Assembly: GCA_965644295.1 (NCBI GenBank)
Contig: CBFFRP010000338.1
Location: 1 to 64,000, forward strand
Origin: Paraphysomonas bandaiensis
Taxonomy: Eukaryota > Protista > Chrysophyceae
Reading direction: 5' to 3'
Length of the DNA stretch: 64,000 nucleotides
Positions 1 to 64,000 of this stretch are shown here, in pieces. The position numbers and the translations under genes are program-made. The notes below the pieces were generated by a model. The model did not search any database and was not told where the DNA came from. It saw only the letters and a list, made by a program, of their open reading frames with translations. Each line of letters starts with the position of its first letter. Within the stretch, counting starts at the first letter, position 1.

Positions 1-61
1 GGTACGACGACACGAACCTGTCTGCCATGAATGTCTGTTATGCTTGATTACATGTACGTAC

Positions 62-1099
62 GTATATATAATGGTTGCGGAAGGAAACCTGTGACTTCAA
101 CTCGCCTCAATAGCGGTGGCGACTGCTATTGGGACAGTGTCGTCATGAAAAGATGTGACCTTCCCAACCTTCATATGTTATACTTGTTTGTTCGGTCACC
201 TGTGATATCCACTCGTGTCAGTAGCGGTGGCGACTGCTATTGGCGCAGGGTTGTCATGAAAAGATGTCGACAGAACTTACTTGTATGTTATACTGTATAT
301 ATAATGGTTGCGGAAGGAAACCTGTGACTTCAACTCGCCTCAATAGCGGTGGCGACTGCTATTGGGACAGTGTCGTCATGAAAAGATGTGACCTTCCCAA
401 CCTTCATATGTTATACTTGTTTGTTCGGTCACCTGTGATATCCACTCGTGTCAGTAGCGGTGGCGACTGCTATTGGCGCAGGGTTGTCATGAAAAGATGT
501 CGACAGAACTTACTTGTATGTTATACTGTATATATAATGGTTGCGGAAGGAAACCTGTGACTTCAACTCGCCTCAATAGCGGTGGCGACTGCTATTGGGA
601 CAGTGTCGTCATGAAAAGATGTGACCTTCCCAACCTTCATATGTTATACTTGTTTGTTCGGTCACCTGTGATATCCACTCGTGTCAGTAGCGGTGGCGAC
701 TGCTATTGGCGCAGGGTTGTCATGAAAAGATGTCGACAGAACTTACTTGTATGTTATACTGTATATATAATGGTTGCGGAAGGAAACCTGTGACTTCAAC
801 TCGCCTCAATAGCGGTGGCGACTGCTATTGGGACAGTGTCGTCATGAAAAGATGTGACCTTCCCAACCTTCATATGTTATACTTGTTTGTTCGGTCACCT
901 GTGATATCCACTCGTGTCAGTAGCGGTGGCGACTGCTATTGGCGCAGGGTTGTCATGAAAAGATGTCGACAGAACTTACTTGTATGTTATACTGTATATA
1001 TAATGGTTGCGGAAGGAAACCTGTGACTTCAACTCGCCTCAATAGCGGTGGCGACTGCTATTGGGACAGTGTCGTCATGAAAAGATGTGACCTTCCCAA
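62..1099 (+). repeat. 233-bp tandem satellite (~4.5 apparently identical units); each unit is a dimer of two related hairpin-forming subunits A and B
   Basis: Identical ORFs recur at 240/473/706 and start again at 939 (period 233). The 70-nt cores ACCTGTGA...CATGAAAAGATGT at 87-156 (A) and 198-267 (B) are 60/70 identical. Confidence 0.97.
73..276 (+). ncRNA. Candidate structured RNA hairpins (first A and B subunits; 5 A and 4 B copies in the array), function unknown
   Basis: Long bulged stem-loop with compensatory pairs between A and B (C106-G133 vs G217-C244; A99-T138 vs C210-G249). G-U pairs favour the + strand, and each subunit has its own closing stem. No expression evidence. Confidence 0.35.
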
Positions 1100-1283
1100 T
1101 CTGCACGTGTTGCATCCGTGTATTCTGTGCCCATGGTCTTTTGCTTGCAGTAAAATACATATCTATTATAAATATACATTAACTATTGAAATATATTGTA
1201 CAGATATATTTACTATTAGCATGAAAGAACCAGTGCCATGTTGAAGACCTTTATGTCCGCCTGCTGCATGCATTATGTGGTAA

Positions 1284-4200
1284 GAGTGAGATGGTATAGT
1301 GTATATAGTTAGATGGTATAGGGATGTATAGTGAGATAGTATAGTGGCATATATTGAGATGGTATAGTGGTATATATTGATATGGTATAGTGGTATATAG
1401 TGATATGGTATAGTGGTATATTGTGAGATGGTATAGTGGTATATTGTGATATGGTATAGTGGTATATTGTGAGATGGTATAGTGGTATATTGTGAGATGG
1501 TATAGTGGTATATAGTGATATGGTATAGTGTTATATAGTGAGATGGTATAGTGGTATATAGTGGGATGGTATCTGCGTGTATTGTGAGATGGTACAATGG
1601 TTGTATAGTGAGATGGTATAGTGTATATAGTTAGATGGTATATGGGTGAATCGTAATATGGTATAGTGGCATATGGTGAGATGGTATAGTGATATGGTAT
1701 AGTAGTGGTATATAGTGAGATGGTATAGTGGTATATAGTGAGATGGTATAGTGGTGAATAGTAATATGGTGTAGGGATGTATAGTGAGATGGTATATTAG
1801 CATAGTTAGATGGCATAGTGATATATAGTTAGATGGTATAGTGCTATAATATAGTGAGATGGTATAGTGATGTATAGTGAGATAGTATAGTGACATATGG
1901 TGAGATGGTATAGTGGTATATAGTGAGATGGTATAGTGGTATATAGTGGGATGGTATCTGGGTATATAGTGAGATGGTACAGTGGTTGTATAGTGAGATG
2001 GTATAGTGGTATATTGTGAGATGGTATAGTGGTATATTGTGAGATGGTATAGTGGTATATAGTGATATGGTATAGTGTTATATAGTGAGATGGTATAGTG
2101 GTATATAGTGAGATGGTACAGTGGTTGTATAGTGCGATGGTACAGTGGTTGTATAGTGAGATGGTATAGTGTATATAGTTAGATGGTATATGGGTGAATC
2201 GTAATATGGTATAGTGGCATATGGTGAGATGGTATAGTGATATGGTATAGTAGTGGTATATAGTGAGATGGTATAGTGGTATATAGTGGGATGGTATAGT
2301 GGTGAATAGTAATATGGTGTAGGGATGTATAGTGAGATGGTATATTAGCATAGTTAGATGGCATAGTGATATAATATAGTGAGATGGTATAGTGATGTAT
2401 AGTGAGATAGTATAGTGACATATGGTGAGATGGTATAGTGGTATATAGTGAGATGGTATAGTGGTATATAGTGGGATGGTATCTGGGTGTATAGTGAGAT
2501 GGTACAGTGGTTGTATAGTGAGATGGTATCTGGATGTATAGTGAGATGGTATAGTGACATATGGTGAGATGGTATCGTGGTATATAGTGAGATGGTATAG
2601 TGGGATGGTATCTGGGTGTGTAGTGATATGGTACAGTGGTTGTATAGTGAGATGGTGTAGTGGTATATAGTGAGATGGTATATTAGCATAGTTAGATGGC
2701 ATAGTGATATATAGTTAGATGGTATAGTGGTATAATATAGTGAGATAGTATAGTGGCATATGGTGAGATGGTATAGTGATATATAGTGATATGGTATAGT
2801 AGTGGTATATAGTGAGATGGTATAGTGGTATATAGTGAGATGGTATAGTGGTATATAGTGGGATGGTATAGTGGTGAATAGTAATATGGTATCTGGATGT
2901 ATAGTGAGATGGTATATTAGCATAGTTAGATGGCATAGTGATATATAGTTAGATGGTGCAGTGGTTGTATAGTGAGATGGTATAGTGGTATATAGTGAGA
3001 TAGTATAGTGGTATATAGTGAGATGGTATAGTGATGTATAGTGAGATGGTATAGTGGTATAATATAGTGATGTATAGTGAGGTAGTATATGGGTGTATAG
3101 TGAAATATAAAAGAATATCTGATTATTACATGAGAACGGTTGCGTACAGAAACTAGTTTTACATCTATAGAATAACTAATAACTCGACTTACTATATACT
3201 ACTATTAGCGGGCTACCGTCTCGGGACTGCTTGTGCATCGCTGCGAGCACCATGGTTCAACCGTCCCTTGCAGTGAGGTTAATCGGGGGGTCTGCCTTTG
3301 GGCAGTGTGTCTGCCGGGCCTGTATCGTGAGTTTTACGGGGGATGGTTGGGGCTAGATGTATATGAGAGTGTAAGTCGGTGGTGTAGATGGTGCTCGTTG
3401 TCGAGGTGGGATTTCGACCACAAGTAAGGAGGAGTTGTTTCCGGAGTGGTGGTGCTTGTCTCTGTCGGGTTCGGACTCTTGCAGCGGATAGAATTCTTGG
3501 GGTGGATGTCGCTAGGAGTAGTTGGAGTATTTTTGGTGTCGGGTGAGTATCCTGCGACGGGCGTTGCTGTGAGTGTGGTGGGGTCGTAATCGGTGTTACT
3601 GATGCCGTGTCTGTGTTGTGATGTCTGAGACCTCTGTTTCGAAGCATGCGGAGCCCTCCACCATATAGGGGAAGGAGGATAGAGGTTACGGATTTTTCGA
3701 GAACGTGGAACTGATGTTCGAGCAGTGAGCTGGATATGTGGCGTCCGAATGCGTCGGTCAATTGTGTGGCAGTAATGTGGCCGGTCCAGTAGCGCTCAGC
3801 CTGGGGTGTGTGTGGATTCCATGCGGCTTTTGCTAGTTTGATTATGGCGGTGTGGAACCAGGGATGGGGGAGCGTGCGTGTGCGAAGTTTGTCGAACTTG
3901 TGGTGTGCTTGGTGAACATCTTCACGTATGTGAGTGAGGTCGGGGTGTGTGCAGGTGAGAAGCATGTGTGCCATGTTGTCGATTGGGAGTGCACAGTCTG
4001 CGCATGCTGAGGCCGTTGTTATGTGATCAGGCCCGGTTTTCCCTTTGGCTTGATTTCTGCCCATCGCGTATGATTTGTCCCATACGTAGGTGTATAGTGA
4101 AATGGTATATGGGTGTATAGTGAGATAGTGTAGTGATGTATAGTTAGGTGGTATAGTGGTATACAGTAGATAGTATAGTGGTATAATATAGTGGGATGGT

Positions 4201-4480
4201 ATAGTGATGCATAGTAATATGGTATGGGTGTATAGTGAGATGGTATATGGGTGTATAGTGAGATGGTATATGGGTGTATAGTGAGATAGTGTAGTGATGT
4301 ATAGTTAGGTGGTATAGTGGCATACAGTAGATGGTATAGTGGTATAATATAGTGGGATGGTATAGTGATGCATAGTAATATGGTATGGGTGTATAGTGAG
4401 ATGGTATATGGGTGTATAGTGAGATGGTATGTGGGTGTATTCTGAGATGGTGTAGTGGTGTTTAGTGAGATGGTTATAGT
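1284..4480. repeat. G/T-rich ~23-bp minisatellite (consensus TAGTGAGATGGTATAGTGGTATA) with a ~548-bp higher-order repeat, interrupted by a LINE fragment at 3107-4088
   Basis: Read directly. The + strand is almost C-free. Matching reverse ORFs end at 1631 and 2179 (offset 548). Confidence 0.95.
3107..4088 (-). mobile_element. 5'-truncated non-LTR retrotransposon (LINE): ORF2 C-terminus with a Cys/His zinc-binding region, plus 3' UTR
   Basis: ORF 3279-4064 contains CADC..DNMAHMLLTC and is open up to the insertion edge. It is flanked by a 15-bp direct repeat GGTGTATAGTGAAAT (3092-3106, 4089-4103), a variant of the surrounding minisatellite unit. Confidence 0.85.
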
Positions 4481-4711
4481 TCATACTTGTGAACTGTATG
4501 TAATATATATGTGTAGTCGGTGACTTTTATTGCTGTAAAACTGAAGTAATATGGAAGAAATTAGTAAAAAATATTATAAATAATACTCTTCACACTGTTA
4601 TTAACTTCATAGTTACTTATTGTGCATAGTTATACCCTTTTCCGACCATCACCAAAAATTTCACCAGGTTTTACATCAAAACCCAGGTTTTGGTATTACC
4701 TCGACTTTGTG

Positions 4712-4895
4712 TAGACGTCTTTGGACCCTGACGAATAAACAGGCATCCGGGAATGGGCCCACATAAATAGTAGGATAAAAAAAGTGTGTACTGATTAGTT
4801 ACAGGTAGAGGTCTAACTAGTTTGTCTAGCATTCATCTAGCTACTAAGTTGGTGCAGGTTTTTAACGCCTATTGCTTATAATAAGACTTTCAATA
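4712..4895 (+). mobile_element. Fragment of the SINE-like family (GC-rich body plus LINE-type 3' tail)
   Basis: 4712-4762 matches the reverse complement of 16025-16078 and 47720-47775. 4765-4895 matches the LINE 3' UTR at 34380-34506. Confidence 0.6.
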
Positions 4896-13879: not shown

Positions 13880-15346
13880 ATGTTTGAGAACAACTCAGAA
13901 GATAAGTTTTTAGATTTACTTGTTGACCAGAATGGTCAAACCTGTTGGCAATATCGGTCAGAGTTCAACATTAACAGTACCATCTATCCTTGCAGCATAA
14001 GAAAAAGTGTTGAAAGTGGTTTACACATTGTGTCTAACAGAACCTTCCGCCGGGGGGATAAAGTATTGGAGGACTTCTCTCTAGTAGCTGTGCCGTATGG
14101 CCCTCACAGTAATCGTATATGCTGGGCGTGCTTGCAACATGGGCATTCAAAAGTAAAAGTTTTCCCCAACATACCTTCTCTCTATTTTTGCAGTATGAAG
14201 TGCTTGCAAGAAACTGAACACTTTGTGGATATGTGTGGCAAGCTTCTAGTTCGACTAGCTTCGATAGAAAATTCTGAACAGTCGCACTTACTTCACCTCG
14301 CCGTGAAGGTTTTGTACTTGAGAGCAAAGAGTTGCACGGGTGTTGCTCTGCATTCATTCGGTAGAGTCGTTTGCCACGAGCAACATCGTGAGTGCCCTGT
14401 TCGTGGGCTAGAAACTGCGGTTGATATCTTATTTAACGGTATCTGCTCTGATGCACCTTTCCTGCTGTCGTGGTGTAGTGTAGATCGGAAGGCGGCTATT
14501 GTGGAGGAGGTTCTACGAAGTGTTCATTTTAATGCGCAGTCATGCCCTGTGCCACACCTTCTCTCCTCAGGATTACTGTGCGTATTTGATACCTTATCTC
14601 GAATGAACCACTCGTGTGACCCCAACACTGTAGTGTGTACCAGGGTGGAGAGAGGAATAATCTGCGGGAGTATTGTTGCCCTAAGATCACTAAAATCAGG
14701 GGAAGAAATCACGATGTCCTACTTGAGCCAACTCTGTCTTCCGGTGTCAGAGCGCCGTGAACTACTCTTATCTGCTTTCCTTTTCACTTGTCAATGCCAA
14801 CGGTGTTCCGCGGAGTCCTCGATTACCTCTAAACCATCAGCGGATATTATTGAACTACAAACTAATGCTCGTGTTGACGGGAGAAACCTTGTATATGTTG
14901 CTGATTCACTGGAAAAGCTAATACGAGAGGCACGATGTAAACGCGGTGCGCAGGTGTATGCCATCCACGACGTTACTCTGTATGGTATGGAGCAACTGAC
15001 TAGAGGAGCAGAGAAACTTGCCACTCATACCGCCATGCTCCTTACAATTCGCTTTGCCTCTATACTAGTTGCCTGTTGGGATATTTCAGGGATAGTAATT
15101 ACCCAACCCTCTCAGATCGTTGTACTTATGGCAGCAGCTAATGCTGCGCGTCAGTTGATGGCATCGAAATTGGTAGAGGATGTATCGAATCATATTTCCA
15201 CAGGGCGATCGCTAGCAAAGCTTGCTGTATTGCAGCTGTCAATGCTTTGCAACACTAAGAGTAGTAGTACTAACGGAGAGATGCATTTTTATTCTACGTT
15301 GAGAATGAGGGCAATGAAACTTTTGAGCCTATTAAGTCAGAATTGA
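13880..15346 (+). CDS. SMYD-like SET-domain lysine methyltransferase; may have short upstream exons from ~13641
   Basis: SET motifs GLHIVSNRTFRRGDKVL, RMNHSCDPN, GEEITMSY; post-SET FTCQCQRC; partial MYND-like CWAC...FCSMKC. Confidence 0.88.
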   Translation: MFENNSEDKFLDLLVDQNGQTCWQYRSEFNINSTIYPCSIRKSVESGLHIVSNRTFRRGDKVLEDFSLVAVPYGPHSNRICWACLQHGHSKVKVFPNIPSLYFCSMKCLQETEHFVDMCGKLLVRLASIENSEQSHLLHLAVKVLYLRAKSCTGVALHSFGRVVCHEQHRECPVRGLETAVDILFNGICSDAPFLLSWCSVDRKAAIVEEVLRSVHFNAQSCPVPHLLSSGLLCVFDTLSRMNHSCDPNTVVCTRVERGIICGSIVALRSLKSGEEITMSYLSQLCLPVSERRELLLSAFLFTCQCQRCSAESSITSKPSADIIELQTNARVDGRNLVYVADSLEKLIREARCKRGAQVYAIHDVTLYGMEQLTRGAEKLATHTAMLLTIRFASILVACWDISGIVITQPSQIVVLMAAANAARQLMASKLVEDVSNHISTGRSLAKLAVLQLSMLCNTKSSSTNGEMHFYSTLRMRAMKLLSLLSQN

Positions 15347-30910: not shown

Positions 30911-33300
30911 AAGGGATAGGGAACAATATATTGCAATACTATTGTTAGGTAGCGTTCCATCAATAGTATTGATGGATTTTTTAAACCGGCCCTACAATAC
31001 TATTGCAATATATTGCAATATATTGTACAATATATTGCAATATATTAGTATGACTAATCAGTAAGTAAACACATCCGTAGTTTTCATTTTTAGTACTTGC
31101 CATATTTTATAAGGTCTAAGGTCACTTGATAATCAAACCCACTACTCTTAACTAATTAAAAGTTTCCTCATACTCATCCTCTGAGCCATCATCGGTGACA
31201 TCATCATCACCATATTCATTCAATATTGATTGAAATATGCTTGCATCCGGCCACAACTGTCGGTTAGCTTTCAGAAACAACAGCATATTAAGTGTAGTAG
31301 GATGCATACGTTTGCGCAACACTGATATAATCAGTTTTGCTGCGCTGAACAGGCGTTCACACGTATTGGAAGTACATACTACATGACTCGTGCACCTGTA
31401 CTTAGATATTTCAACTTTTCGCTTCTTAAGTTTTTGAGCTGATTGAAGAATTTTTTCCGCATAGCCAACTTCAGCTTCATCATCCTCTGTATTGTTGCAA
31501 TAATCACTGTCTGAACGGAGATATATTCTAACAGCATCTTTCTCAGATCTTGTCAAGTCCAATTCTTCGCCTGCTTGGAGTTTTGCAATTCCATTCTCGA
31601 AATTCGGATCATTAACAATGGGACTGTTTTTCTGTAAAGCAGATAGTGGATACTTTGGCCTAAAGTCCCTCAATAAGCCATCAAATATGTTCCGGCATTC
31701 ATAAAGATTCACTTGACTTGATCCTCCAGTTTGAAGCAATTTCGAGACGCTTTCAAACTTCCTCAGGTCGTCTACAAGGGCGATTATTTCGGTATTCTGT
31801 CGAGGAGTAGGAATCATATCAGTAACTGCAAGCGGTAAGTCTTCAATTTTTAATACATGATCTTTTATACGCATCCACTTTACGAGAACCTGAAACATAG
31901 AAGACCATCTTGTGACATTTACCCTTTCTGGTAGCAGACTGGTTTGGCCACGTAGCAATGCAGCATTCTTAATCTGCTTCAACTTCCCCATTAGTAGGTC
32001 TACTTTGCGAATAAGAGGCCTAATGCCTTCGTCAGATCTTGTCACATCTCCTTGGTTATTCCTCTTCTCTTTGCTGCCAATGAGTTCATTGACAGCGAGA
32101 TTTAGTCGGTGAGATGCACATCCAACTAGGGGTACACCTAATATATATTATAACATTCGACAATTTCACACAAGTAATACGGTGTTACCAGAATCAGTAG
32201 CCAATTTTCTGTTTGTAGCACAGTTATCTCCAAGATAAAACTCAACAATGTCGCAAACATTGTCAGCGTTAACCTCAACTCCAAATTTATTGAGAACTTC
32301 TACGATAGTATCAAACCAATCCGCAGCAGTGAATCCGTAGAATTTCTCTTCATCAGGTAGATCTTCATCGAAAACAGTGTTGTCATCAATATCCTCTTGC
32401 ACATTACAAGACAACAATAACAAATTCGGAGTATTGGTTCGGTCGCAAAAGGTTGCAAATATTGCACTGTAGTGGTGGGAGTCCGACGTCCAACCGTCCA
32501 TGACTAGACCAAATGTTGGTGGTAATATATCTTTAATCATATCACGTAGCTTCAGTTCCAACAGTCTCATATATTTTTTCAGTGTTTTTGTAGTTATCTT
32601 ACCCAAAGAAGTCTTATTTCTAGTTAATTTCTTCTCACAGAAATTTAATGGAAGATTTTCCTCGACAATCCACTCCACCCACTCATAAATTGTTTTCGCC
32701 TTGTCTGAAGGCTGCAGAACAAAAGCATCCATGGGACCATTGGTGCAGACAGCCCGTAAATACCTCTTCAATGTCTCCTCCCACACATCATGAGAGAAAG
32801 TGTGATCCTTTAGATTGTTGTATCCATTCCGAATATTCTGTTGTCGTTTACGTCCGCAGATTTTACACTCGTGTATGTTCGGGACACCTTCGACCGGACT
32901 CCAAAAACAGCGGTAAATGTCCCTACTCTTGTATGCACTCATCATTCAGTTGTCTCTTCTTGTCACTATAGGATATATATACTATATTAAGAGAAGTACT
33001 GTACATACATGTGGAGAGGTGTAGAGTGCTGTTTGAGCTGGCGATACATAAAAAATAGAAAATAACATCAAAAATAGGCTTTTTTTCTTATTTTCCGGAT
33101 ATTTGTATACAGAGGCGTATATTTTGCACCATACAGTTGAGGATCTTCTCTTATATGACTATCATAATATTGATTGCAATATATTGCAATAGTATTGTGA
33201 GCTCTATTAACAGAAACACTATTGATGGAATATTTGACCAGTCCACCAATCAATATATTGTACAATATATTGCAATACAATATATTGTTCCCTATCCCTG
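30911..33300 (-). mobile_element. Full-length, apparently autonomous hAT DNA transposon (~2.39 kb)
   Basis: TIRs (C)AGGGATAGGGAACAATATATTG at both ends and ATATTGCAATA subterminal repeats. Flanks are GAAAAAAA.. and GAAAAAAC (degenerate 8-bp TSD). The empty site is visible at ~54070. Confidence 0.93.
31152..32945 (-). CDS. hAT transposase, 580 aa, one 51-nt intron (32138-32188)
   Basis: BED finger CKIC..HTFSH; D in LVMDGWT; D in LGDNCATN; GCASHRLNLAV restored by splicing; NVTRWSS; E in SNTCERLFS. 757+986 nt = 581 codons with no disruption. Confidence 0.93.
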
Positions 33301-36505: not shown

Positions 36506-37279
36506 TCAAGATTCATCACCATTCTCATGGGCCTCGTCGTTGTCATCATCATCCGCTTCAGCATACTCATCATCATCGCTTTCTTCGAGGCTACCCCAAA
36601 GGCCCTGAACCATATTACTCATTTCCTCGTCACTGGGCTCGCGATGATACTTTTCAACAAAACCGTCGTGTAGCCGCGTTACGAGAAGCGCCATCGCGTC
36701 ATCGTCGTCTTCGTCGAGGTCATCCTCACTGTCTTCTTCTTCAGGATCACCGTCACTATCTTCTTCTTCGTCTCCCTCTTCTATAAGGTCTAACTTACCC
36801 TCCTGATCCTCAACATGCCACGGTTGGATCTCACGCTTCGTGAATTCCTCGTACTCATCCATAGAGAAGTCCAGCGGCATGCCATCATCATCGCTCCTAG
36901 TCAGAAGAATATCGCCATATACTTTAGCATCATGGAAAGGAGGTTGAAGTTTATGTTTATTGGCATTGTCATTGGAAGATGACGAGAGCTGATCTGCTCG
37001 AATGAGAAGTATAACCTGGATATCTTCCCACTGCCCGAGAAAAGTGATTTCTCCTCCTAACAACTCCTGAGGCGCTTTCACAGAGGGAGTCATATTCAAC
37101 ATAACTTCTAATTTCGTGCCATCCTTTTTCAGTAATACGTTCTTTACACTAGGGCAGGTTTGGGACATCAGTTTCTTTATGTCGACATGTTGCAAACTGT
37201 TGCATGCATCAGCCTCAATTTCGGTCTTTGCACGCTTCTCTGGTGAACCGTTTTTAATATGAGCAGGCCTTTTTGACAT
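36506..37279 (-). CDS. Conserved-looking uncharacterised protein (possibly DUF5880-like) with an acidic C-terminus; intronless
   Basis: Likely start MSKRPAHIK. Globular core LGGEITFLGQW..NKHKLQPPF..VYGDILLTRSDDDGMPLDF, then a D/E-rich tail. Domain name from recall only. Confidence 0.8.
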   Translation of the reverse strand: MSKRPAHIKNGSPEKRAKTEIEADACNSLQHVDIKKLMSQTCPSVKNVLLKKDGTKLEVMLNMTPSVKAPQELLGGEITFLGQWEDIQVILLIRADQLSSSSNDNANKHKLQPPFHDAKVYGDILLTRSDDDGMPLDFSMDEYEEFTKREIQPWHVEDQEGKLDLIEEGDEEEDSDGDPEEEDSEDDLDEDDDDAMALLVTRLHDGFVEKYHREPSDEEMSNMVQGLWGSLEESDDDEYAEADDDDNDEAHENGDES

Positions 37280-37794
37280 TTTAAATAATAGGATTGATGA
37301 GTGCCCCGCATATGTGGTGTGAAATATGCTGTTGTGTCCACAGAGCTCATATGTAGCGACAGTGTCATATCGGCATCCTTCGTACATTTTTGTTCATAGA
37401 TGCCTCTTATATTGAGTCAACAATTATCTGTATTTCAGCCGTAGTTGTATTGCAGTAATATAGAGAATATTGACTTCGTTATATTTCCGAAAACTAAGAT
37501 GCTGACTGCCGATAATCGTACTTGGATATCAGTGTGAGAGCTAGAAATGCCCACGACTACGATATCTACTACAGGGTTGTATACCATACAACAGGAGAGT
37601 GTGTACACAACAGAGTATCCCTGTACCGTATAGCTGTCATGCGGCATGCGTTCTCATCAACCATCAATCTGAGTATACATTGTATTTACATCAGTATTCT
37701 CCTATTTTGTATACATTTCCACGCTCTGTCCACTGATGAGACGGCCACTCCATACCACTTTAAAATATCACCTATAGTCAACTCACTCCGAATA

Positions 37795-61956: not shown

Positions 61957-64000
61957 GGGAAATATTATTCAACCTAGTCAAATTGGTTGAATTACCTAGT
62001 CACGCTATTTTTGGTGGAATAACCTAGTCAAAGTAATAAATGACTCAACCTAGTCAACTTTGGTATTCAACCTAGTCGTTCTTATATCCATTGATTACAC
62101 ACTGTGACTGTCTAAGATACCATCTCACACCACACAATATATTAGTGGCTTACAGAGCATCACAACAAACACTCAAACATAACAATAAGCTCATGTATAC
62201 ATATCTACATAACACAGATGTACGTGTATGTCTATCTAGCCTATCTGTAGCATGTATGCATATAGCGATGGGTCCCTGTGAGTGTTATGGGGAGGAGGGT
62301 CCATGAAGCTGTGGGCATAACTCACTCTATGATCCGCAGGACATCTTGAGATCTTCATATGCTGGGAGTGATGGCGCTCATCTTCCTTCACTTCAGCACT
62401 GAATGAATGACTTCGATTGCTGCATTGGCTTTCAGGGGTGCATAAATCTCCCTATTTTTAGTCCAACGGAAAAAAAAGGAGGTTTTCAGGGAACAAAATT
62501 CTAAAAGCAGCATCATTGAAGTGGACTGTAGAGCAGCATCAGAACATCAGCATCATGAGTGTGTCATCAGTCTTACAGCATCATGAGTGTGTCATCAGTC
62601 TTACAGTATCATGAGTGTGTCATCAGTCTTACAGCATCATGAGTGTGTCATCAGTCTTACAGCATCATGAGTGTGTCATCAGTCTTACAGCATCATGAGT
62701 GTGTCATCAGTCTTACAGCATCATGAGTGTGTCATCAGAACATCAGCATCATGAGTGTGTCATCAGTCTTACAGCATCATGAGTGTGTCATCAGTCTTAC
62801 AGTATCATGAGTGTGTCATCAGTCTTACAGCATCATGAGTGTGTCATCAGTCTTACAGCATCATGAGTGTGTCATTTGTCTTACAGTATCATGAGTGTGT
62901 CATCAGTCTTACAGCATCATGAGTGTGTCATTTGTCTTACAGTATCATGAGTGTGTCATCAGTCTTACAGCATCATGAGTGTGTCATCAGAACATCAGCA
63001 TCATGAGTGTGTCATCAGTCTTACAGCATCATGAGTGTGTCATCAGTCTTACAGCATCATGAGTGTGTCATCAGTCTTACAGTATCATGAGTGTGTCATC
63101 AGTCTTACAGCATCATGAGTGTGTCATCAGTCTTACAGCATCATGAGTGTGTCATCAGAACATCAGCATCATGAGTGCGTCATCAGTCTTACAGTATCAT
63201 CATGAGTGTGTCATCAGTCTTACAGTATCATCATGGTCATGTGCATCGAGACTGCCTCCCTGGCGCATGCGCAATTGTAGACCCCGGTCCTCAAAACTGT
63301 AAGCGCATGGATGTTATAGTCCAGGGTAGAAATGAGGTTCATTGGTAAGTATAACGACTCATGGATTATTCATCATTAACAGCGGATAAATTTTTATAGG
63401 TACGTGAACTCAAAGAGGAACTTGTTCATTATTGAACATACGAGGGAGAACAGAATGTGCAAATCTTATATAGATATGTTTCATTCCGTCAAAAGGAAAG
63501 ATCGACTTGCAGTACATCACTTGAGAGGTATGGGTAGTACATTTCTTTCTTAATTATATTTCTTAATATTGCCACCAGGGGACATTGATGTGAAGCACAT
63601 GTCCAGCTCGATCAGGCCTGCTAGGAAACGCGGCCGGCCTCGCAATGCAGCAAAAGCTTTAATCAATGATGAATCCATTGATGTCATGGCCCTCAAGCCA
63701 GGGAACTGGAAGAATACGTACGTTCGCCACCCCCAGTACCTGAATGGTATGTGCGTAGATTACCGCGTAGTGCCAAATCACAAGAATGAAAAACTCCTTC
63801 GATGGCAGTGTCGGTTCTCGGATGCCCTGATGACATACTTCCACACCCTAAGATTGTTGGGTTCGATGTCCATGAAATGAAGGAGGCTGTCGAACTTCAC
63901 CGGACTTGGTCACGAGAAACTGCGCATTTCTCGTTCGATTGCGAAGACGAAATGTGATGCATTGCATGTGTACAATAGATGCATTTGCATTAATTGATGG
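61957..64000 (+). mobile_element. MULE copy 4 (diverged subfamily), runs off the window end
   Basis: End GGGAAATATTATTCAACCTAGTCAAATTGGTTGAATT is the reverse complement of 55390-55426. Spliced LAVHHLRGDIDVKHM..RKRGRPR (AT-hook). Confidence 0.85.
62537..63235. repeat. 28-bp minisatellite CATCATGAGTGTGTCATCAGTCTTACAG (~24 units) inside MULE copy 4
   Basis: Read directly. Recurrent variants ..AGAACATCAG, ..ACAGTATC and ..CATTTGTC. Confidence 0.97.

What the first reader, a model, noticed from the sequence alone, without database searches (positions are those of the whole stretch)
62..1099. Tandem array of hairpins with covariation: candidate unrecognised structured-RNA cluster
Seen: each 233-bp unit holds two 70-nt cores (87-156, 198-267) that fold into the same long stem with a bulged A, a bulged C and a GGCG loop. 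Of their 10 differences, 8 fall as four facing pairs: C-G to G-C, A-U to C-G, C.A to U-G and U.C to A-U. The other 2 are Watson-Crick to G-U changes. The unpaired parts (ACCUG, the asymmetric loop GAAAAGAUGU, the bulges, the apical loop) are invariant. Each core also has its own closing stem of different sequence: GGTTGCGGAAGG/CCTTCCCAACC for A and GTTC.GTC/GAC.GAAC for B. G-U pairs favour the + strand. Inference: selection on RNA structure, giving 9 copies of a processed RNA (pre-miRNA cluster, guide/sno-like RNA, unknown ribozyme or protein-binding element). I do not recognise the family.
Basis: partly seen in the sequence, partly recalled or inferred. Interest (0 to 1): 0.85.

Follow-up and report, generated by a model that had tools for sequence, protein, structure and literature searches.

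The report
Transposon-carried array of covarying RNA hairpins
The hairpin array is real and looks shaped by selection on RNA folding, but it is not a lone gene cluster: it is cargo inside a recently active 6.9-kb DNA transposon that has spread over 100 copies of the hairpin through this marine protist genome, and its RNA function is still unknown.

Summary
Observation confirmed. Window 62-1099 holds 4.5 perfect copies of a 233-bp unit, each made of two diverged ~100-nt imperfect hairpins, A and B. All 10 core differences lie in the stem. Eight of them form four facing pairs (random placement p about 1e-4), and three more compensated pairs lie in the outer stems. The unpaired motifs are identical.

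B has six G-U pairs. It folds better than shuffles only as + strand RNA, not as DNA and not on the - strand.

The array is internal cargo of a ~6.87-kb non-autonomous DNA transposon with perfect 25-bp terminal inverted repeats and 3-bp target-site duplications. About 10-14 near-identical copies carry the array, and about 140 elements share the ends. The window holds only the right 4.7 kb of one copy.

No Rfam family, tRNA, metagenome, viral or protein relative was found. Pattern and covariance-model searches found the hairpin only in this element family.

Six runs on record as RNA or guessed to be RNA hold the unit's words but little or none of its flanks. In two of them (RNA only by guess) the unit's k-mer depth is 459 and 239. 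Strand and ends are unknown.

Best reading: a transposon-borne, transcribed, structure-constrained hairpin RNA of unknown role, possibly a Dicer substrate. The same 233-bp array was noted before by this scan on another piece of the genome.

The parts
1..4706 (+). Right-hand 4.7 kb of one copy of a ~6.87-kb non-autonomous TIR DNA transposon. The contig starts inside the element. The missing left 2.2 kb is seen in full copies such as C146:131842-138711.
   Evidence: Window 1/10-4706/4708 matches other contigs at >99%. The boundaries are shared and the flanks differ.
62..1099 (+). Tandem array of 4.5 x 233 bp, 100% identical. Each unit is hairpin A plus hairpin B.
   Evidence: TRF. The same array sits at 14 contig places with 3.5-5.5 units.
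72..172 (+). Hairpin A, first copy. Further copies are at 305-405, 538-638 and 771-871, and 1004-1099 has an altered 3' closing stem. The core is 87-156.
   Evidence: RNA fold -41.3 kcal/mol, z -5.0. DNA parameters give z -3.7.
185..285 (+). Hairpin B, first copy. Further copies are at 418-518, 651-751 and 884-984. The core is 198-267. It has six G-U pairs.
   Evidence: RNA fold -39.0, z -3.8 on the + strand and z -0.2 on the - strand. DNA parameters give z -0.3 (+) and +1.0 (-).
1100..1276 (+). Unique stretch that has followed the last A hairpin since before the array expanded. Both old relics (C26, C297) have it.
   Evidence: Alignment to the relics: 93% and 89% substitution identity, the same as the hairpins. 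The contig of poly(A) metatranscriptome run X17 runs from the array to 1150.
1277..3061 (+). G-rich 23-bp minisatellite inside the transposon.
   Evidence: TRF.
3279..4064 (-). ORF that is a 3' fragment of a LINE ORF2, nested in reverse orientation. It is not a transposase.
   Evidence: ORF list. By eye it resembles the C-terminus of the second long open frame (773 aa, no Pfam hit) that follows the RT/endonuclease frame of the LINE nested in sibling element L048. It has no Pfam hit itself.
4089..4480 (+). Second block of the 23-bp minisatellite.
   Evidence: TRF.
4682..4706 (-). Right 25-bp terminal inverted repeat of the transposon.
   Evidence: Boundary alignment. The TIR pattern occurs 285 times in the genome and the control 0 times.

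Best explanation
The array is an internal tandem repeat carried by a recently active, non-autonomous TIR DNA transposon. The element has 25-bp perfect TIRs, 3-bp target-site duplications and no transposase of its own. Each 233-bp unit is an old duplication of a ~115-nt module. The + strand transcript of that module folds into a ~100-nt imperfect hairpin with fixed unpaired motifs: ACCUG, the 3'-side loop GAAAAGAUGU, a bulged A, a bulged C and a GGCG loop. I take the hairpins to be a transposon-borne structured non-coding RNA whose pairing has been kept by selection at the RNA level.

Shown:
- the array and its fold;
- the compensatory pattern between A and B;
- the transposon context and copy number;
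- unit sequence in contigs of runs on record as RNA or guessed to be RNA.

Inferred:
- that the + strand is the transcribed strand;
- that selection, rather than a mutational mechanism, kept the pairing;
- the role of the RNA.

My best guess for the role, about 30% on its own, is a long-hairpin substrate for the cell's Dicer/Argonaute machinery (hpRNA or miRNA-like small-RNA precursor). A protein-binding or exonuclease-resistant stable RNA is the next option.
For: Transposon context:
- Shared element boundaries with unrelated flanks.
- Perfect 25-bp TIRs and matching 3-bp TSDs in 8 of 9 element pairs, including the hairpin-bearing copies C146 (TTC) and C433 (TTA).
- The TIR occurs 141 times forward and 144 times reverse, against 0 for the control.
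- The array lies at 14 contig places at 99-100% identity.

Structure:
- z -5.0 and -3.8 for A and B as + strand RNA, and z -6.1 for the unit.
- All 10 core differences are in pairs and 4 are facing doubles (p = 9e-5).
- 93.5% of pair cells are paired across 19 distinct copies.
- Pair 13/52 shows A-U, G-U and C-G in different copies.
- Three further compensated pairs lie in the outer stems (read and the sequence).

RNA rather than DNA:
- 8 G-U pairs on the + strand.
- With DNA parameters B is no better than shuffles on either strand (z -0.3 and +1.0).

Transcription:
- Six runs on record as RNA or guessed to be RNA hold 0.33-0.43 of the sampled words. DNA runs hold 0.69-0.92. By my own estimate 0.43 is about the share of the words that belong to the unit.
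- Two runs of one organism, RNA only by guess, have a 263-nt self-closing contig (233 + k-1) at k-mer depth 459 and 239, and nothing laid on the right flank.
- Two metatranscriptomes (poly(A) and random-primed) also carry it at depth ~3-4.

RNAi machinery: two Piwi-domain genes and a 1695-aa frame with tandem RNase III domains.
Against: - Only two independent sequence types exist, so the covariation is one pairwise comparison.
- The energy test depends on direction: A->B p = 0.004, but B->A p = 0.2.
- The old relics (C26, C297) are no better conserved in the hairpins than in the adjacent flank.
- No relative exists outside this element family.
- The RNA evidence comes from contigs only. There is no strand, no ends and no silent-stretch control. 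Three runs are 'RNA' only by guess, and the tool warns that holes in coverage prove nothing.
- No arm carries a conserved 21-nt segment, which is unlike canonical miRNA precursors.
- Tandem repeats inside DNA transposons are common and usually have no function. A sibling element carries an unrelated 347-bp array that folds only slightly better than shuffles (z about -2.5 on both strands), with no pair of discrete hairpins.
Confidence: 0.5

Rival explanations
1. Neutral palindromic satellite. The hairpin-forming monomers have no function and were simply amplified inside a transposon. The facing double changes come from DNA-level template switching or arm-to-arm copying in an imperfect palindrome. 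That mechanism makes multi-base compensatory changes without selection. Transcription is read-through noise of a multi-copy element.
For: - Template-switch mutations are documented to create and repair stems (PMC8794818).
- The outer-stem change is a block of three adjacent pairs and the core has one block of two adjacent pairs. Few-event copying would give such blocks.
- The relics show no extra conservation of the hairpins.
- There are no homologues elsewhere.
- TIR-family siblings carry other, non-hairpin arrays.
Against: - Template switching gives perfect Watson-Crick arms. B instead has six G-U pairs, one of them next to a swapped pair (U-G beside G-C).
- The bulges and the asymmetric loop are kept identical in A and B rather than erased.
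- None of the 10 core changes lies in the 22 unpaired positions (p = 0.016).
- As DNA, B is not a significant hairpin.
- Run contigs hold the unit at high depth without the flanks. Simple read-through does not predict that.
Confidence: 0.3
2. Single-stranded DNA or cruciform element that acts in cis on the transposon, for example as extra binding sites for the transposase or its partner, or as a replication or repair signal.
For: - The array has travelled with the element lineage for a long time: relics at ~89-92% identity already have the A and B types.
- The invariant basal motif (A)ACCTG resembles the AAACCTGG / CCAGGTTT motif, which otherwise occurs only in the TIRs and subterminal regions.
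Against: - With DNA parameters B is no more stable than shuffles on either strand, and the - strand B hairpin does not form. A cruciform is therefore unlikely.
- The array lies 2.2 kb from the left end and 3.6 kb from the right end.
- About 90% of elements with the same TIRs lack it.
- The motif similarity is only 5-6 nt.
Confidence: 0.07
3. A new self-processing RNA. The conserved asymmetric loop plus the apical loop form a small self-cleaving ribozyme or a specific nuclease site. It cuts multimeric array transcripts into unit-length, possibly circular, RNAs, as satellite and retrozyme hammerheads do.
For: - It is a tandem array of ~230-nt units with two conserved-loop hairpins per unit.
- The run contigs are exactly one unit closed on itself, at high depth and without flanks.
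- The unpaired nucleotides are invariant while the stems vary.
Against: - No known ribozyme model matches even at E <= 10.
- A self-closing contig is what any tandem repeat gives in a de Bruijn assembly.
- The unit contains no hammerhead core motif (CUGANGA) (read).
- There is no conservation outside one genome.
Confidence: 0.06

Closest known systems
Internal tandem repeats (satellite-like arrays) inside non-autonomous TIR DNA transposons
   Same: The array sits between intact TIRs of an element with TSDs. Copy number varies between insertions (3.5-5.5 units). Sibling elements with the same ends carry other arrays: 225-bp, 347-bp and a 23-bp minisatellite.
   Different: Here the monomer is a pair of diverged hairpins with compensated stems, invariant loops, a strand-specific G-U bias and an apparent abundant RNA. 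Ordinary TE-internal satellites are not reported with that combination.
Hairpin-RNA (hpRNA) loci and tandem miRNA clusters (for example Drosophila hpRNAs built from tandem hairpin repeats, the zebrafish miR-430 array, repeat-associated clusters such as Sfmbt2; named from my own knowledge and PMC3212979, PMC10317233 listed)
   Same: Tandemly duplicated hairpins of ~100 nt, linked to mobile or repetitive DNA, in a genome that has Dicer-like and Argonaute genes.
   Different: No arm has a conserved 21-24-nt segment. The best-conserved stretch includes the loop. No small-RNA data exist, and no target was identified.
Satellite and retrozyme ribozyme repeats (hammerhead-bearing tandem repeats of newts, schistosomes and others; from my own knowledge)
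   Same: Tandem units of ~200-400 nt, transcribed, and seen as unit-length self-closing contigs in RNA assemblies.
   Different: No hammerhead, twister, hairpin, HDV-like or other Rfam ribozyme was detected. The carrier is a cut-and-paste TIR element, not a retroelement.
PIF/Harbinger-type DNA transposons
   Same: 3-bp target-site duplication and short TIRs. The genome holds 38 DDE_Tnp_4 matches.
   Different: The TSDs are not restricted to TWA (TTC, CAA, AAA and TAC occur). No transposase could be linked to these TIRs, so the superfamily is unresolved. CACTA, Zator or Academ types, which also give 3-bp TSDs, are not excluded.

Membership tests
TIR (class II) DNA transposon, non-autonomous | Terminal inverted repeats at shared boundaries, with unrelated flanks at different insertions | tested here: met
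   Perfect 25-bp TIRs. The flanks differ at every copy. There are 285 TIR hits against 0 for the control.
TIR (class II) DNA transposon, non-autonomous | Target-site duplication of fixed length | tested here: met
   Identical 3-bp duplications flank 8 of 9 elements examined.
TIR (class II) DNA transposon, non-autonomous | No transposase ORF inside the element | tested here: met
   The only long non-repeat ORF is a reversed LINE 3' fragment with no Pfam hit.
PIF/Harbinger superfamily | DDE_Tnp_4 transposase (plus Myb-like partner) in an autonomous element with the same ends | not tested
   38 DDE_Tnp_4 matches exist in the genome.
PIF/Harbinger superfamily | 3-bp TSD, typically TWA | tested here: inconclusive
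   The length of 3 bp is met. The sequences are TTC, TTA, CTA, TAA, CAA, AAA, TAC and AAT, so only some are TWA.
Any curated RNA family (Rfam 15) | Covariance-model score at or above the gathering threshold | tested here: not met
   The only hit is MIR7526 at 22 bits against a gathering score of 110, E = 0.15. It bridges two different hairpins.
miRNA precursor | Stable hairpin of suitable length | tested here: met
   A ~45-bp imperfect stem, z -5.0 and -3.8.
miRNA precursor | A conserved ~21-nt mature arm with a more variable loop | tested here: not met
   The longest A/B-invariant stretch is 22 nt and spans the apical loop. Each arm carries substitutions.
miRNA precursor | Discrete 21-24-nt duplex reads with 2-nt 3' overhangs | not testable with these tools
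   No small-RNA run was offered. Only contigs were available.
H/ACA or C/D box snoRNA | H box (ANANNA) between the hairpins and ACA 3 nt from the 3' end, or C (RUGAUGA) and D (CUGA) boxes at the termini | tested here: not met
   Read from the sequence. The A-B spacer has no ANANNA, no terminal ACA is present, and there is no RUGAUGA/CUGA pair. Rfam also found nothing.
Known self-cleaving ribozymes (hammerhead, twister, twister-sister, pistol, hatchet, hairpin, HDV-like) | Match to the family's conserved core and structure | tested here: not met
   cmscan at E <= 10 on both strands gave none. The unit has no CUGANGA.
tRNA / tRNA-derived SINE | Cloverleaf detectable by ARAGORN | tested here: not met
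   0 genes in 1-1400.

The most novel reading that the evidence does not exclude
The hairpin is a new kind of self-processing or protein-recruiting RNA module that a cut-and-paste DNA transposon carries for its own benefit. Array transcripts would be cut at the conserved asymmetric loop into stable unit-length, possibly circular, RNAs. That would explain why run contigs hold the 233-nt unit at high depth with little or none of its flanks. It may be one instance of a wider, undescribed habit of transposons in this genome to carry covarying hairpin arrays; other first-stage notes list at least six more such arrays.
Probability: 0.07. Interest if true: 0.85.

Novelty: new member of a known kind. 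Interest (0 to 1): 0.42.

Why it matters
If the RNA-level constraint is real, this is an orphan structured RNA that spreads by riding a DNA transposon in a little-studied marine heterotroph. Earlier notes of this scan call the organism a Paraphysomonas-like chrysophyte; I did not check that. It would give a concrete and abundant candidate for studying how small-RNA or other RNA-based systems deal with transposons in stramenopiles, where almost nothing is known.

It also serves as a caution. A striking covariation signal came from only two paralogous sequences inside a repeat. The right next step is stranded RNA data, not a family name.

Tried and rejected
- Rfam at E <= 10 on 1-1400, both strands: only a sub-threshold MIR7526 hit that bridges two hairpins.
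- ARAGORN: nothing.
- Genome-wide pattern that fixes only the loops and covariance model R1: 106 and 115 hits, all in the same element family. Only 150 of 1159 first-look candidates were scored, so very distant copies could have been missed.
- JGI metagenome scan with a loops-only pattern: 3 hits, none forms a hairpin and all look like chance matches. Records of this genome may be left out of that scan.
- IMG/VR scans for the apical 22-mer and for the TIR: none.
- Translation of the array's 106-aa ORF against 5.8 billion proteins: none. The unit length of 233 is not a multiple of 3, so coding is rejected.
- H/ACA, C/D, k-turn and hammerhead motifs looked for by eye: absent.
- Test of extra conservation of the hairpins against the flank in the relic copies: none found.
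- Another array in a sibling element (347 bp) folded to see whether hairpins are a family habit: only weakly structured, with no discrete hairpin pair.
- The sigma-70 promoter/terminator scan was not used because the genome is eukaryotic.

Full report
1. THE OBSERVATION

Window 62-1099 is a tandem array of period 233, 4.5 copies, with 100% matches. Each unit holds two ~100-nt imperfect hairpins:
- A at 72-172, core 87-156;
- B at 185-285, core 198-267.

As + strand RNA, A folds at -41.3 kcal/mol (z -5.0) and B at -39.0 kcal/mol (z -3.8). The whole unit folds at -87.8 (z -6.1) on the + strand and -61.1 (z -3.1) on the - strand.

The two 70-nt cores differ at 10 positions. On the common structure:
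- all 10 lie in paired positions;
- 8 form four facing pairs (A-U>C-G, C-G>G-C, C.A>U-G, U.C>A-U);
- the other two are C-G>U-G and A-U>G-U.

Random placement of 10 changes gives four or more facing doubles in 9e-5 of trials, and all ten in paired positions in 0.016 of trials.

The energy test depends on direction. Mutating A at random reaches B's stability in 0.4% of trials. Mutating B at random keeps A's stability in 20% of trials.

I aligned the outer closing stems by hand on a shared GAC 3' of the core. Three further adjacent pairs are swapped with pairing kept (A-U>C-G, A-U>U-A, G-C>U-A). The spacer motif ATGTTATACT is shared by both half-units. The 233-bp unit is therefore an old duplication of a ~115-nt module.

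2. RNA OR DNA, AND WHICH STRAND

- A has 2 G-U pairs and B has 6. On the - strand these become C.A mismatches, and the - strand B hairpin is not better than shuffles (z -0.2).
- With DNA parameters B is not significant on either strand (z -0.3 and +1.0). A stays moderately stable (z -3.7 and -2.1).

So only a + strand RNA makes both hairpins good. This argues against a cruciform or single-stranded DNA role. It also argues against a purely DNA-level process that keeps the arms complementary.

The genome (G000) has 62.6 Mb in 669 contigs, and the window is C338:1-64000. The unit occurs at 14 contig places at 99-100% identity with 3.5-5.5 units, plus two decayed relics at C26 and C297.

Comparison of the flanks shows a shared ~6.87-kb element:
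- It begins 2.2 kb left of the array and ends at window 4706.
- It has perfect 25-bp terminal inverted repeats.
- Unrelated DNA lies outside it, and identical 3-bp duplications flank it: TTC at C146 and TTA at C433. In sibling elements they are CTA, TAA, CAA, AAA, TAC and AAT, which makes 8 of 9 pairs.
- The TIR occurs 141 times forward and 144 times reverse in the genome, and the reversed control 0 times. About 140 elements of 0.6 to more than 8 kb share these ends.

Several contigs, this one among them, start inside the element. Those starts are assembly breaks, so the number of distinct array-bearing copies is about 10-14.

The full copy C146:131842-138711 (L046) contains, in order:
- a 225-bp x 2.7 repeat;
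- a dispersed duplicate that carries a perfect 16-bp hairpin;
- the 233-bp array;
- 1.8 kb of a 23-bp minisatellite;
- a reversed 3' fragment of a LINE ORF2;
- more minisatellite.

It has no transposase. It is a non-autonomous cut-and-paste transposon that was active very recently. The superfamily is open. A 3-bp TSD fits PIF/Harbinger, and the genome has 38 DDE_Tnp_4 matches.

4. IS THE HAIRPIN KNOWN, OR FOUND ELSEWHERE?

- Rfam at E <= 10 gave only a far sub-threshold MIR7526 match that bridges two hairpins.
- ARAGORN found nothing.
- A pattern that fixes only the basal motifs found 106 sites. A covariance model built from A, B and a relic found 115. All lie in this element family.
- A loops-only pattern in JGI metagenome contigs gave three hits that form no hairpin and look like chance matches.
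- IMG/VR had neither the apical 22-mer nor the TIR.
- The array's 106-aa ORF has no protein relatives, and 233 is not a multiple of 3.

The hairpin is an orphan confined to one transposon lineage.

5. HISTORY

The C26 relic holds the tail of an A copy, then B, then A, then the right flank, at about 92% substitution identity. The C297 relic holds a single A copy plus the same flank at about 89%. Two things follow:
- The A/B split and the link to the flank 1100-1276 predate these insertions.
- The perfect 4.5-unit array is a recent expansion.

In both relics the hairpins are no better conserved than the flank. That is expected if most of the changes happened in the dead copies, so it gives no support for constraint.

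With the relics as outgroups, the active lineage changed:
- G>A at core position 13 (G-U to A-U);
- A>G at core position 46 in both A and B (U-A to U-G);
- U>C at core position 55, which is unpaired in A.

None of these breaks a pair. Across 19 distinct copies 93.5% of pair cells are paired, and pair 13/52 shows A-U, G-U and C-G.

6. RNA EVIDENCE

Fourteen DNA-type runs, carrying three coded organism labels and several marine metagenome labels, hold 0.69-0.92 of the sampled words of window 1-1300. Six runs on record as RNA or guessed to be RNA hold only 0.33-0.43. By my own estimate 0.43 is about the fraction of the sampled words contributed by the unit alone.

Laid on window 830-1290:
- Two 'RNA?' runs of one organism each give one 263-nt contig that closes on itself (233 + k-1), at k-mer depth 459 and 239, and nothing on the right flank.
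- A random-primed metatranscriptome gives the same 263-nt contig at depth 3.9.
- A poly(A) metatranscriptome gives a contig over 865-1150 at depth 3.

A whole-genome DNA library would also contain the flanks. These runs therefore most likely are RNA, and they contain array sequence with little or no flank.

Limits of this evidence:
- Contigs give no strand, no ends and no expression level.
- Three of the runs are RNA only by guess.
- The tool warns that holes in coverage prove nothing.

7. MECHANISM

The best-supported reading is a transposon-borne, transcribed hairpin RNA whose pairing is constrained on the + strand. I put that at about 0.5.

What the RNA does is inference. The genome has two Piwi-domain genes and a 1695-aa frame with tandem RNase III domains. 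A ~45-bp imperfect hairpin is therefore a plausible Dicer substrate (hpRNA or miRNA-like). Against a canonical miRNA, the longest invariant stretch spans the loop and neither arm is conserved over 21 nt. The identical unpaired motifs would fit a protein-binding or self-processing module equally well.

Rivals:
- A neutral palindromic satellite whose compensatory blocks come from template switching (PMC8794818), at 0.3. The G-U pairs, the preserved bulges and the absence of loop changes weaken it.
- A DNA-level cis element, at 0.07. B's lack of DNA stability weakens it. The only hint in its favour is a 5-6-nt resemblance between the basal ACCTG and the terminal AAACCTGG/CCAGGTTT motifs.
- A new ribozyme or circular-RNA system, at 0.06. 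No known core is present, and a self-closing contig is what any tandem repeat gives.

8. COMPARISON AND NOVELTY

Tandem repeats inside DNA transposons, and hairpin-RNA or miRNA clusters born from repeats, are both known kinds of thing. This is an orphan member that combines the two, with unusually clean pairwise covariation and an apparently abundant RNA.

Earlier first-stage notes of this scan list the same 233-bp array on another piece of the genome (s1-439230) and several other 'covarying hairpin arrays' in transposons of this genome (s1-445100, s1-443562, s1-440826, s1-445189, s1-440921, s1-443482). I did not check those. If they hold, the phenomenon may be genome-wide and worth a joint analysis.

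The identification of the organism as a Paraphysomonas-like chrysophyte comes from another note (s1-436727) and was not tested here.

9. VERDICT

The key correction is that this is multi-copy transposon cargo. The function is untested. Interest is moderate.

Noticed in passing
window 1277-3061 and 4089-4480: Strongly G-rich 23-bp minisatellite (unit GTGGTATATAGTGAGATGGTATA) that fills about 2.2 kb of the transposon. GC skew is +0.47 over the first 4 kb. Its reverse strand gives long spurious ORFs such as 1806-2702.
   Followed up: partly
window 3279-4064 (-): A 261-aa ORF that is a 5'-truncated LINE ORF2 tail nested in reverse inside the transposon. A sibling TIR element (L048 = C159:104100-111450) holds a LINE with two long open frames: RT plus endonuclease (890 aa) and a second frame of 773 aa.
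   Followed up: partly
window 4707-4770: The DNA just outside the right TIR resembles the DNA just outside the left TIR of two other copies (C432, C263). This transposon seems to have landed repeatedly in another repeat family.
   Followed up: no
L046:1588-1653 and 2141-2206 (C146, left part of the element, outside the window): Two copies of a perfect 16-bp stem with a 34-nt loop (GTGCTCAGGAGGTGTG ... CACACCTCCTGAGCAC) inside a dispersed internal duplication.
   Followed up: no
L047:3496-4871 (C73, sibling element with the same TIRs): A different internal tandem array, 347 bp x 4 at 99% identity, only weakly structured (z about -2.5 on both strands). The TIR family picks up varied arrays.
   Followed up: partly
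window 62548-63231: 28-bp minisatellite, 24 copies, 92% matches.
   Followed up: no
window 13880-15346 (+), 31152-32045 (-), 36506-37387 (-): ORFs with a SET domain (E = 5e-8), a weak hAT dimerisation domain (below cut-off) and DUF5880 (E = 3e-26). These are probably further mobile-element genes in the window.
   Followed up: no
whole genome (C119:289883-290803, C212:91577-92526, C377:216520-217656): Two Piwi-domain genes and one long frame with two RNase III domains. An RNAi pathway is probably present.
   Followed up: partly
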